Assembly (NCBI GenBank): GCA_964057225.1
Contig: OZ059900.1
Location: forward strand, 7,192,001-7,256,000
Origin: Auanema rhodensis
Lineage: Eukaryota; Animalia; Nematoda
Direction of reading: 5' to 3'
DNA length: 64,000 nucleotides
In this document: positions 12,001 to 15,000 of the stretch, in pieces
Numbering within the stretch: the stretch's first letter is position 1
Layout: every line of letters begins with the position of its first letter
Notes under the pieces: generated by a model
What the model was told of the DNA's origin: nothing
The model's database searches: none
Seen by the model: only the letters and a program-made list of their open reading frames with translations
Translations under genes and position numbers: made by a program

Positions 12001-15000
12001 CAACGTATATCGTTAGCCAGAGCAGTGTATGCCAGAAGTGAGATTTATCTTCTCGATGATCCTCTGGCTTCCGTAGATGCTCACGTCGCGAAGCATATTT
12101 TTCGTCAAATTATTTGTGAGACATTTTGATATGTCTATGTAATAATAATAATTATTACAGCAAACAAATCTGGGATGCTTAATCATACAACGAGGTTTTT
12201 CGTCACAAATCAGCTACAGTTCTTGAAGCACTGTGATCAAATCATTTATATGAGAGGTAAAATTAGAAATTATTACGTTGATGCAATCCTGTTAAGAGGG
12301 CCATGTGTTTGAGACAGGCTCATATTTGGAATTGGCTAAACGAGAAGGACCATTCAAGGAAATGATTGATGAATTCACGTCTCAAGAAGCACGAATTCGA
12401 GCTCGAAGTATTAGCCTTTTGCAACAAAGTAACATACATTTGTTGTTCAATATTGTACTCATAATTCAGAGATTGATATAATTAATGCTCAAATGGTGGA
12501 AAAAAATGAATCAGAAGATAGTCGTGAGACATCAAGTTCTTGGAGCAAGGTAATTAAGAAAATACAAAAACCGACACTTTCTCAAAGTTGATATTGCAGA
12601 GCACGATTGAATCTAAATCGTCGAGTGATGAAGATACTGAATCAACAGCTTTATTAGATTCTACAAATACCGTTCAGAAAAGAAATTTCCGACCTGAAGC
12701 TGAAGAACAAGTTGAAACTGGACAGGTACGTATACGAGTGTACGTGTAGGTAAAATTACTTACATTTAGGTACCATATCACATACACATGGCTTATTTGA
12801 AAGCAATTGGCCTGCCGTTGGTAATATCCTTTGTTGGAGTTTACATTTTTAGCTCCATTCTTGGGGTGTGTTCTAGAGATATATTTTGGCCTTAAAAACA
12901 AACATTACAGGTTTGTGCAAACCTCTGGCTAGCTCGATGGACAGATGATGCTAGACAAATCATTGCTGAAGGCAATGGAACATATAATGAAATGTTCAAT
13001 CGTTTAGGAGTGTATACTGTGTTTGGACTTGGACAAGGTATATTAATATAAGTGAATTGTAATTAGATCCAATTATATTCAGCGTTTGCTGTGTGCACAG
13101 CTTCAGCGCTTATGGCTCTTGGAATGGTAAGAGCCGGGCGCGTCTTACACGACGATATGCTTTCAAGAATTCTTCACGTTCCAATGTATTTCTTTGACAC
13201 TACGGCTACAGGAAAGATAATGACTCGTTTCAGTAAGGTAAGACTTACTTTGTTTCATTTGAATGAAATAAAAAAAATAATAAAATAACAATTCGGAATT
13301 TGAAATTTGGAAATTGGAAAATGTTATCAAACGGTGTTATATTTTTTTGCATGTTTTGTGTGATATAATATAATATTATACCTCAGCACGTTTTCTTTAT
13401 AAAAGTAAAAAACTAACATTAGTATTTATAACTTGCAAGTTTTGATAAAAATCAAAAATAGTTCTCTATAATTCAAAAAATTGCTTAATATACTACTATT
13501 TTTTTAAAATTTTACTTGCTATACCAACTAATACGTATGATTGTTTATTTTAAAACAGGATATCGAAATTGTGGATACGCGTTTACCTACTGCACTGCTC
13601 ACATTCACCGGAGCGATTGTACAAGGTGTTATCATCTTGTTTGTTCCCATATATACTACTCCCCTTATTATCCTTGCCATCATACCTATTCTCGTCTTCT
13701 ACTACATGATTTTGGTCAGTTTGATTTTTGAGTCTTTCTTTGTATTAACTGCTGTTACTAATTGAATGTATTCACCAGTATCTTCCTATTTCCATGCTTC
13801 CACTTCGAATTCGAAACAAATTGAGAAGAATGATACACTAGCACTTTTTGTGATTTAAGATTAATTCAAAATATGAAAACAATTATGGGGTTCCTAATAA
13901 TATCAAGAACAAAAAAACAAAATTTTTTTATCTGAAATAACTTATTAGTATAAGTTTCAAAATTAGAAATAATGCTATCTTTTGTTATAAACTTTCACTT
14001 CAATCTGAATTCAAAAACCTAGCATTTAAGGAAGTTGATACAATTGATGTTCCATTGCCACGTTCAATGATGAGTATTGCTCGATTATCTTGGCTGATGA
14101 TCGAGCAATTCGTACTTATTTTTTGGATTTTTCCTATTCTTGGAGTAGTATTCAGTCCATTAATTGTAGTTTTAAAAAAACTTATGGTTTGTCGTTATAA
14201 ACATTTGATTACTCGACTAATCAGCATTTCAATTTTTCATATATTCATTAACATTAGTGCCTAATATTTTATACAATACTTCTATTCCTTCTAAAACCTG
14301 CTTTGCTCTGTTGTAATATCGAAATTATATTACTTTCATTAAATGAATAACTTTCAGCGTTACTACGTAAGCACTTCAAGACAACTAAAACGATTAGAAT
14401 TCGCATCTCGAGGGCCCATCAATTCTATTTTACAGGTTCTTGAAAATTTAAAATTCAAACTCCTAATAGAAGATAAAGTTAATTGAAACTTAATATTCAG
14501 GATACTGCTCTTGGAGGAGCATCAATAAGGGCATTCAAGGAAGAAGAACGCTTTGCAGAAGAATGTGCTAAAAGAGTAGATAATAATTTAATAACATATT
14601 ATCCTGGAATTGTTGCCAACAGGTTAGTATTGCTTTACTTTGCTAAAATGCAAATCTTATTATAGATGGCTAGCCGTACGCCTAGAACTGGTTGGAAATC
14701 TAATTGTATTTTTCTCAGCCGTTTTCGCTATTTTATATCGAGAAAGTGAAACTGTAACTGCTGGATTAGTTGGACTTTCAATTTCATATTCTCTTAATGT
14801 GAGATAATGAAGCTCATTTTTCTAATTATTAATAATTTAGATCACTCAAACCTTGAATTGGGCAGTTCGAATGAGCAGTGAACTTGAAACAAATGTTGTA
14901 GCAGTTGAGCGCATACAAGAATACACTGAACTAGAAACTGAAGGTGTTCTTGATTTATTTCATAAAACTTTTTATTGTTAAGGAGCTCGTCAAATGATTT

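What the first reader, a model, noticed from the sequence alone, without database searches (positions are those of the whole stretch)
13238..14357. Hidden tandem exon duplication: mutually exclusive TM14-TM15 cassettes that swap the transporter's specificity region
Seen: two phase-0 exons of exactly 156 nt lie between RFSK and RYYVSTSRQ. They share D..LP, P35 and P43 but are otherwise very divergent; 24b adds Arg, Glu, Trp and Lys residues where 24a is neutral. The residue after LP is Thr in 24a and Arg in 24b. Established (from memory): this aligns with human MRP1 ELDTVDSMIPE, where Glu1089 in TM14 is a drug-specificity determinant. C. elegans mrp-1 and Drosophila MRP also use mutually exclusive exons in TMD2. 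Inference: one gene yields two pumps with different substrate ranges. Both exons are 3n and 316 nt apart, so neither NMD nor steric hindrance explains exclusivity and an active mechanism is needed.
Basis: partly seen in the sequence, partly recalled or inferred. Interest (0 to 1): 0.8.

Follow-up and report, generated by a model that had tools for sequence, protein, structure and literature searches.

The report
Known nematode mrp-1 alternative exon pair
The two 156-base exons are real, but they are this worm's copy of the already published mutually exclusive exon cluster of the nematode drug/metabolite pump gene mrp-1; only the first exon is seen in transcripts, and the second has diverged unusually fast.

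Summary
An ABCC/MRP gene on the + strand has two phase-0, AG/GT-flanked, 156-nt exons, 13559-13714 ("24a") and 14031-14186 ("24b"), 316 nt apart. Each encodes the same 52-residue TM14-TM15 segment.

This is not a hidden or lineage-specific duplication. It is the orthologue of the C. elegans mrp-1 exon 13A-D cluster: four mutually exclusive 156-nt exons (PMC4165533).
- 24a is a C-type cassette: 27/52 identical to Ce13C, 75.8 bits on a C-type profile.
- 24b is a D-type cassette: 29.3 bits on a D-type profile, against a maximum of 10.0 in 2000 shuffles.
- The A-B-C-D order holds in genomic loci of seven other nematodes. This species has only C and D.

Spliced RNA contigs from four runs of one study join 23-24a-25 only. 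24b appears in no transcript contig and in no predicted protein.

24b has diverged far faster than D cassettes elsewhere (14.5/52 against 27.6/52 mean identity), although its frame, length and splice sites are intact. Whether it is a rare or conditional exon or a decaying relic stays open; I put it at roughly 55:40.

A UGCAUG-N4-GUGUG element upstream of 24a and a weak intron-intron pairing are mechanistic leads only.

Verdict: new member of a known kind, low to moderate interest.

The parts
9200..16076 (+). ABCC1/mrp-1-type transporter gene (approximate span; 5' end not fixed)
   Evidence: tblastn of Brugia pahangi MRP (P0004) covers TMD0 to the C-terminus between 9202 and 16022. TMD2 is 55-59% identical to Haemonchus and Caenorhabditis mrp-1 proteins.
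   Evidence: RNA-contig joints 13037>13083 and 13237>13559.
13238..13558 (+). 321-nt intron upstream of 24a, unusually long for this gene (others 42-65 nt); no relic cassette
   Evidence: no A/B-type profile hit above noise.
13348..13362 (+). UGCAUG-UUUU-GUGUG, candidate RBFOX(FOX-1/ASD-1)/SUP-12-type element 211 nt upstream of 24a
   Evidence: UGCAUG lies in the intron just upstream of the C cassette in 5 of 8 nematode loci against 1.35 expected. The precedent is egl-15 (PMC2777236). Function is inferred, not shown.
13292..13321 (+). upstream arm of a candidate intron-intron RNA duplex that would loop out 24a
   Evidence: Best local duplex is -20.6 kcal/mol with 13788-13816; 1 of 60 dinucleotide shuffles reaches it. 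Weak evidence.
13559..13714 (+). cassette 24a = C-type (orthologue of C. elegans mrp-1 exon 13C); the exon used in all observed transcripts
   Evidence: Joints 13237>13559 and 13714>14358 in contigs of runs X1, X2, X3 and X15. 27/52 identical to Ce13C. Type-C profile 75.8 bits.
13788..13816 (+). downstream arm of the candidate duplex, in the 316-nt intron between the cassettes
14031..14186 (+). cassette 24b = diverged D-type (orthologue of C. elegans exon 13D); intact frame and splice sites, not seen in RNA
   Evidence: Type-D profile 29.3 bits against a shuffle maximum of 10.0. Its AAG acceptor and GTTTGT donor match the Nippostrongylus D cassette. Mean identity to other D cassettes is 14.5/52 against 27.6/52 among the others. 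No RNA coverage.
   Evidence: RNA-contig joints.

Best explanation
This is the nematode mrp-1 (ABCC1-type) mutually exclusive cassette cluster for the TM14-TM15 hairpin, reduced in this species to two of the four ancestral cassettes. 24a is the C type and 24b the D type.

Shown: 24a is the exon used in the transcripts available. The two exons are never joined to each other in those transcripts.

Inferred: 24a wins by default because its splice sites are stronger (CAG acceptor, against AAG acceptor plus GUUUGU donor for 24b). 24b is an intact but fast-evolving cassette, used rarely or only in certain tissues or stages. The switch would need active repression of 24a. The candidates are the UGCAUG-N4-GUGUG element 211 nt upstream of 24a, acting like the egl-15 Fox-1/SUP-12 element, and/or an intron-intron pairing that loops 24a out.

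Swapping the cassette changes residues at positions 11, 15, 19 and 22. Their ABCC1 equivalents (human E1089, M1093, S1097, N1100) line the plastic substrate pocket. The two isoforms would therefore differ in substrate handling.
For: Anatomy:
- Both exons are 156 nt, phase 0 and AG/GT-flanked.

Orthology:
- C. elegans exons 13A-D are each 156 nt and mutually exclusive (PMC4165533; coordinates verified on L001).
- 24a matches 13C best and 24b matches 13D best.
- Profile scores are 75.8 bits (C) and 29.3 bits (D), with the shuffle maximum at 10.0.
- The A-B-C-D order is conserved in seven other nematode loci.

Usage:
- Spliced contigs from four runs show 23-24a-25 and no co-inclusion.

Signs that 24b is still maintained:
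- It keeps exact length, open frame, AG and GT, and the D-type signature residues R11, S12, R18, E25, W32, P35, P43.
- Its AAG/GTTTGT splice sites equal those of the Nippostrongylus D cassette, and D donors are non-consensus in all eight loci.
- Its GC3 of 0.23 is within the range of constitutive exons, 0.15-0.44.
- Its BLOSUM similarity at the observed identity is somewhat above neutral simulations (p 0.02-0.14).

Pocket:
- Bovine Q1088, M1092, S1096 and N1099 contact substrates (PMC12647609).

Regulation:
- UGCAUG sits upstream of the C cassette in 5/8 species against 1.35 expected.
- The egl-15 precedent is in PMC2777236.
- The duplex is -20.6 kcal/mol, reached by 1/60 shuffles.
Against: - No transcript contig, RNA run word or predicted protein holds 24b.
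- 24b has lost residues that are nearly invariant in other D cassettes (F16, T19, A33, T34, Y48, L52). It is far more diverged than expected from the C cassette of the same gene.
- Substitution-only neutral simulations keep the frame open in 16-35% of cases, so an open frame alone does not prove selection.
- Hydropathy does not separate 24b from neutral expectation.
- Overall GC of 24b (0.33) is below all nine confirmed exons (0.36-0.46).
- The UGCAUG statistic is post hoc and the species are related.
- The RNA pairing is marginal, lies in low-complexity AT-rich sequence, and could not be tested for covariation.
Confidence: 0.55

Rival explanations
1. 24b is a silenced relic. The D cassette lost its use in this lineage, as the A and B cassettes already did, and is drifting. 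The gene now makes a single, C-type pump.
For: - Only 23-24a-25 is seen in RNA contigs of four runs, and 24b is absent from RNA-run words and protein sets.
- The D cassette is strongly accelerated here (14.5/52 against 27.6/52) while the C cassette is normal (23.5/52 against 22.5/52).
- Near-invariant residues are lost.
- Its GC is the lowest of all exons.
- Neutral simulations leave 16-35% of sequences stop-free.
- This lineage has already lost the A and B cassettes without trace.
Against: - About 55 neutral substitutions would be needed. Yet there is no indel, both splice dinucleotides are intact, the length is exactly 156 nt, and the D-specific residues are kept, including the single-codon Trp32.
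- Similarity at the given identity is above neutral expectation (p 0.02-0.14).
- Logan contigs drop minor isoforms at the depth seen (about 5-11), so absence is weak evidence.
Confidence: 0.4
2. One reading: a recent, lineage-specific ('hidden') tandem duplication of exon 24 that created a new specificity variant.
For: The two exons have the same length and phase and lie next to each other.
Against: - 24a and 24b are only 6/52 identical to each other.
- Each matches a different ancient cassette type shared with clade III, IV and V nematodes, in the same order.
Confidence: 0.02
3. 24b is a chance open frame in an AT-rich intron with no relation to the transporter.
For: Pairwise BLASTP against 24a is not significant (E=0.19). 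A PDB search with 24b alone finds nothing meaningful.
Against: - The type-D profile score is 29.3 bits, against at most 10.0 in 2000 shuffles and at most 2.8 in 44 stop-free non-coding windows.
- Its position, length, phase and order are all correct.
Confidence: 0.01

Closest known systems
C. elegans mrp-1 exons 13A/13B/13C/13D (Kuroyanagi, Takei & Suzuki 2014, PMC4165533)
   Same: Same gene family and the same position, between ...NRFSK and RFY..SRQLKR. Same exon length (156 nt, 3n). Long intervening introns (C. elegans 435/154/334 nt; here 316 nt). Mutually exclusive use. 24a corresponds to 13C and 24b to 13D, in the same order.
   Different: Only two cassettes here, with no trace of A or B. 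The read-count column of Table 1 in PMC4165533 lists similar numbers for 13B, 13C and 13D (37, 35, 31); I take these as usage counts. Here only the C type is seen in RNA. The D cassette here is much more diverged.
MRP/ABCC1 tandem-exon arrays of other animals (Yue et al. 2017, RNA Biol 14:1399, cited in PMC6071210 and PMC7434440; Drosophila MRP with 8 variants; ABCC9/mrp/mrp-1 mapping in PMC9741552)
   Same: Tandemly duplicated, equal-length, mutually exclusive exons that replace part of TMD2. Competing intronic RNA structures have been proposed for arthropod MRP.
   Different: According to those papers the arrays arose independently in different phyla. Here a docking/selector system is not established: only a marginal duplex was found. 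I could not read Yue et al. itself.
C. elegans egl-15 exons 5B/5A, switched by Fox-1 family (ASD-1/FOX-1) plus SUP-12 (PMC2777236)
   Same: A UGCAUG with a nearby GUGUG lies in the intron upstream of the first of two mutually exclusive exons. In egl-15 this represses the upstream exon so that the downstream one is used.
   Different: In egl-15 the elements are juxtaposed and close to the exon, and they were proven genetically. Here they are separated by 4 nt, lie 211 nt upstream of 24a, and are untested.

Membership tests
ABCC1/MRP-1 (long MRP) transporter gene | TMD0-TMD1-NBD1-TMD2-NBD2 architecture with ABCC-type sequence | tested here: met
   tblastn of Brugia MRP (P0004, 1564 aa) aligns from residue 20 to 1558 along 9202-16022. 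TMD2 is 55-59% identical to nematode mrp-1 proteins.
Nematode mrp-1 exon-13 mutually exclusive cassette cluster | Tandem 156-nt, phase-0 exons between ...NRFSK and RFY..SRQLKR that encode TM14-TM15 | tested here: met
   PMC4165533 Table 1.
Nematode mrp-1 exon-13 mutually exclusive cassette cluster | Each exon belongs to one of the conserved cassette types A-D, in the order A-B-C-D | tested here: met
   24a is type C (75.8 bits) and 24b is type D (29.3 bits, shuffle maximum 10.0). The order is conserved in seven other loci.
Nematode mrp-1 exon-13 mutually exclusive cassette cluster | Never more than one cassette per mRNA | tested here: met
   Contigs of four runs join 13714 directly to 14358. 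There is no 24a-24b joint. This rests on contigs only, from one study.
Nematode mrp-1 exon-13 mutually exclusive cassette cluster | Each cassette is actually used in some mRNA | tested here: inconclusive
   24a is used. 24b is not seen in contigs, RNA-run words or proteins. Contigs drop minor isoforms, and raw reads were not available.
Docking-site/selector competing RNA structure system (Dscam/arthropod MRP type) | One conserved docking site complementary to a selector next to each variable exon, supported by conservation or covariation | tested here: inconclusive
   The best i1-i2 duplex is -20.6 kcal/mol and is reached by 1/60 shuffles. The i2-i3 and i1-i3 pairs are not better than shuffles. 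No sufficiently diverged close relative was available for covariation. Analogous tests gave 1/40 in C. briggsae, 0/40 in Pristionchus, and nothing significant in three others.
RBFOX/SUP-12-regulated mutually exclusive exons (egl-15 type) | UGCAUG (plus GUGUG) in the flanking intron, and dependence of exon choice on the factors | tested here: inconclusive
   The motif is present at 13348-13362 and is recurrent upstream of C cassettes. Dependence on the factors is not testable with these tools.

The most novel reading that the evidence does not exclude
24b is not decaying but is a re-tuned D cassette. It evolved fast at and around the pocket-lining TM14 positions and is used only in particular tissues or stages. 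The choice would be set by a nematode-wide UGCAUG (here UGCAUG-N4-GUGUG) element upstream of the C cassette, with or without intron looping. That would supply the missing mechanism for the NMD-independent, non-steric exclusivity of mrp-1 cassettes.
Probability: 0.2. Interest if true: 0.5.

Novelty: new member of a known kind. Interest (0 to 1): 0.3.

Why it matters
The mrp-1 cassette cluster is a textbook-grade case of isoform diversity in a detoxification and metabolite exporter. How 3n cassettes separated by long introns are kept mutually exclusive is still unexplained in C. elegans (PMC4165533).

This locus adds three things:
- A natural reduced version of the cluster, with C and D only.
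- A lineage in which the normally best-conserved cassette (D) has diverged sharply while the C cassette has not.
- A simple two-exon system in which the candidate UGCAUG/GUGUG element and the intron pairing could be tested.

In practice it also shows that many public nematode and insect MRP gene models wrongly string several cassettes into one protein. Examples are the 1631-aa C. briggsae model and the 1746-aa Toxocara model.

Tried and rejected
- Pairwise BLASTP of 24a against 24b and PDB phmmer with each 52-aa exon alone. Both queries are too short and hydrophobic to be informative, so I replaced them with cassette-type profiles.
- First RNA duplex script: it timed out. Whole-intron duplexfold then gave a meaningless full-length duplex. 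I replaced it with 36-nt window scans plus dinucleotide shuffles.
- Search for decayed A/B cassettes in the three introns: none found.
- Low GC3 as a sign of decay: rejected, because 0.23 lies within the range of constitutive exons.
- The open reading frame as proof of selection: rejected, because 16-35% of neutral simulations stay open.
- Weak AAG acceptor and GTTTGT donor as a sign of decay: rejected, because Nippostrongylus D has the same sites and D donors are weak everywhere.
- Protein search with the 107-codon open frame around 24b: no hit, so no relatives' 24b for dN/dS.
- Yue et al. 2017 and Yabe et al. 2005 are not held in the library.
- Haemonchus and Steinernema hermaphroditum loci could not be fetched.
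- Reads were laid on contigs of four runs. No raw RNA reads were on offer, so minor-isoform junctions could not be counted.

Full report
**1. What is in the sequence**

The window carries an ABCC1/mrp-1-type gene on the + strand, from about 9.2 to 16.1 kb. tblastn with the Brugia pahangi MRP (P0004) covers TMD0 to the C-terminus.

The layout around the finding is as follows:
- The exon ending ...NRFSK stops at 13237, with donor gtaaga.
- 24a is 13559-13714, with acceptor aaaacag and donor gtcagt.
- 24b is 14031-14186, with acceptor catttaag and donor gtttgt.
- The next exon starts at 14358 ([12 protein letters not shown]).
- 24a and 24b are each 156 nt and phase 0, and 316 nt separate them.

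The flanking introns are 321, 316 and 171 nt. The other confirmed introns of the gene are 42-65 nt.

**2. Is 24b more than a chance open frame?**

On their own the two exons are only 6/52 identical, and BLASTP gives E=0.19. PDB searches with the single exons give nothing useful.

I therefore collected about 270 ABCC proteins. From them I cut 114 cassette units lying between NRFSK and RFY..SRQLKR. Many gene models run two to four cassettes together, which conveniently exposes the alternatives.

I fetched the C. elegans locus (L001). On it the four published mutually exclusive exons 13A-D, each 156 nt (PMC4165533, Table 1), translate cleanly.

Nematode cassettes fall into four types. Profiles of the types give these scores:

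| Exon | Type C | Type D | Type B | Type A |
|---|---|---|---|---|
| 24a | 75.8 bits | 31.9 | 25.1 | 20.7 |
| 24b | 2.4 | 29.3 bits | 13.4 | 2.0 |

On the type-D profile, 2000 shuffles of 24b reach at most 10.0 bits, and 44 stop-free non-coding windows of this window reach at most 2.8. So 24a is a C-type cassette (27/52 identical to Ce13C). 24b is a diverged D-type cassette (15/52 to Ce13D, its best match among the four).

**3. Ancient cluster, not a hidden duplication**

I scanned the genomic loci for cassettes:

| Species | Cassettes found, in order |
|---|---|
| C. elegans, C. briggsae, Nippostrongylus, Toxocara | A-B-C-D |
| C. angaria, Pristionchus | B-C-D |
| Steinernema carpocapsae | a weak A-like, then C and D |
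| This window | C-D |

There is no relic of A or B in this window's introns.

**4. Expression**

Four RNA-like runs of one study (X1, X2, X3, X15) each give a spliced contig that matches the window without a mismatch. Nine GT..AG joints are seen. The contigs join 13237>13559 and 13714>14358, that is 23-24a-25.
- No contig touches 14031-14186.
- No contig joins 24a to 24b.
- 24b 31-mers occur only in DNA runs, of organisms A-D.
- A protein search with the 107-codon open frame around 24b finds nothing.

These are contigs at depth of about 5-11, so a minor isoform would be lost. Absence is weak evidence.

**5. Is 24b alive?**

Points against:
- Among 12 other nematodes the D cassette is the better conserved one. 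Mean pairwise identity is 27.6/52 for D against 22.5/52 for C, and the D minus C difference is +5.2, never below -2.
- Here C is normal (23.5/52) but D is 14.5/52.
- Near-invariant residues are lost: F16, T19, A33, T34, Y48, L52.
- Its GC (0.33) is the lowest of all exons.

Points for:
- Exact length, open frame, AG and GT are all kept.
- D-specific residues are kept (R11, S12, R18, E25, W32, P35, P43).
- GC3 of 0.23 lies within the constitutive range of 0.15-0.44.
- The AAG acceptor and GTTTGT donor are the same as in the Nippostrongylus D cassette, and D donors are non-consensus in every locus.

I simulated AT-biased neutral substitution, starting from real D exons, until identity fell to the observed level. 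About 45-62 substitutions are needed, and 16-35% of runs stay stop-free. Similarity at that identity is somewhat lower than observed (p 0.02-0.14). Hydropathy does not discriminate.

Substitutions alone therefore do not exclude decay. That many neutral changes with no indel, and with all four splice-site bases unchanged, would be unlikely. This last step rests on an assumed indel rate and is inference. I put a live but minor or conditional exon at about 0.55 and a relic at about 0.4.

**6. What the swap would do**

The cassette equals human MRP1 residues 1079-1130 (bovine numbering is one lower, PMC12647609). In cryo-EM structures, bovine Q1088 (human E1089), M1092, S1096 and N1099 of TM14 contact vincristine, estrone sulfate, verapamil or cyclic dinucleotides in the 'plastic pocket' (PMC12647609). 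These are cassette positions 11, 15, 19 and 22.
- 24a has T, T, A, Q at those positions.
- 24b has R, S, L, L.
- Position 11 differs by cassette type: acidic in A, H/G/N in B, small in C, Arg in D.

A change of substrate handling is thus plausible by homology, but it is untested. That E1089 governs anthracycline resistance is from my memory (Zhang, Cole & Deeley 2001). PMC12647609 reports that E1089A has little effect on vincristine transport.

**7. How exclusivity and choice might work**

Both exons are 3n, and the intron between them is long. In C. elegans the 3n clusters showed no difference in multiple-inclusion or all-skipping isoforms in an NMD mutant, and the mechanism is left open (PMC4165533).

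There are two leads, neither proven.

(a) UGCAUG-UUUU-GUGUG lies at 13348-13362, 211 nt upstream of 24a.
- In egl-15, Fox-1 family proteins and SUP-12 bind UGCAUG and GUGUG upstream of the first of two exclusive exons. They repress it so that the downstream exon is used (PMC2777236).
- UGCAUG occurs in the intron just upstream of the C cassette in 5 of 8 nematode loci, against 1.35 expected from shuffles (P about 0.0014). The test is post hoc and the species are related.
- UGCAUG also follows the D cassette in four species, but not here.

(b) The best local duplex between the introns flanking 24a pairs 13292-13321 with 13788-13816.
- It is -20.6 kcal/mol, against a shuffle mean of -16.6 with SD 1.7, and 1/60 shuffles reach it.
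- It would loop 24a out.
- The other intron pairs are not better than shuffles.
- The same test around the C cassette gives 1/40 in C. briggsae and 0/40 in Pristionchus, and nothing in C. elegans, S. carpocapsae or C. angaria.
- The sequence is AT-rich and low in complexity, and covariation could not be tested.
- The scan's sister note s1-429856 covers this pairing.

**8. Comparison and verdict**

The locus meets the structural criteria of the nematode mrp-1 exon-13 cluster. Only 'every cassette is used' remains open for 24b.

The phenomenon is published for C. elegans (PMC4165533). According to papers that cite it, it was also analysed across phyla by Yue et al. 2017; I could not read that paper.

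This is a new member of a known kind. The new details are the reduction to C+D, the use of C only in the available RNA, the sharp acceleration of D, and the recurrent UGCAUG upstream of C. Interest is low to moderate.

The organism is a nematode without close relatives in the protein libraries. The best hit to a TMD1 exon is 57% identical, and TMD2 is 55-59% identical to strongylid and Caenorhabditis mrp-1.

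Noticed in passing
window 17004-64000: A 348-bp satellite in about 135 tandem copies at 98% identity fills the rest of the window, starting less than 1 kb after the gene's end. Composition is flat at about 30% GC with constant positive GC skew.
   Followed up: partly
window 7300-7800: (TC)n/(GA)n and (TA)n microsatellite tracts upstream of the gene, visible as SLSLSL and IYIYIY frames.
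   Followed up: no
P0221, P0185, P0163, P0224, P0203, P0205, P0228 (proteins): Public gene models of nematode mrp-1 include two to four mutually exclusive cassettes in one protein, giving lengths of +52, +104 or +156 aa. Several insect MRP models of 1.8-2.4 thousand aa look like the same annotation error.
   Followed up: partly
L007:8058-8065 (Pristionchus pacificus): The C-type cassette appears to be followed by gcatgc instead of gt. This could be a GC-AG intron whose donor overlaps a GCAUG motif. I did not check it against transcripts.
   Followed up: no
L001:7639, 7942, 8473 and L002:6302, 6706: In C. elegans and C. briggsae mrp-1, UGCAUG also lies 15-37 nt after the C cassette and 56-77 nt after the D cassette. 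S. carpocapsae and Toxocara also have it just after D. This may be a second conserved element, and it is missing in this window.
   Followed up: partly
L004:4909-5064 (Steinernema carpocapsae): The C-type cassette scores only 41.9 bits and its 52-codon frame runs into non-cassette sequence. That suggests a shorter or rearranged C exon in this species.
   Followed up: no
window 14076-14109 (inside 24b): A 14-nt inverted repeat at 93% complementarity, ATTGCTCGATTATC / GATGATCGAGCAAT, lies within exon 24b (I10). It could form a local hairpin in the pre-mRNA. Significance was not tested.
   Followed up: no
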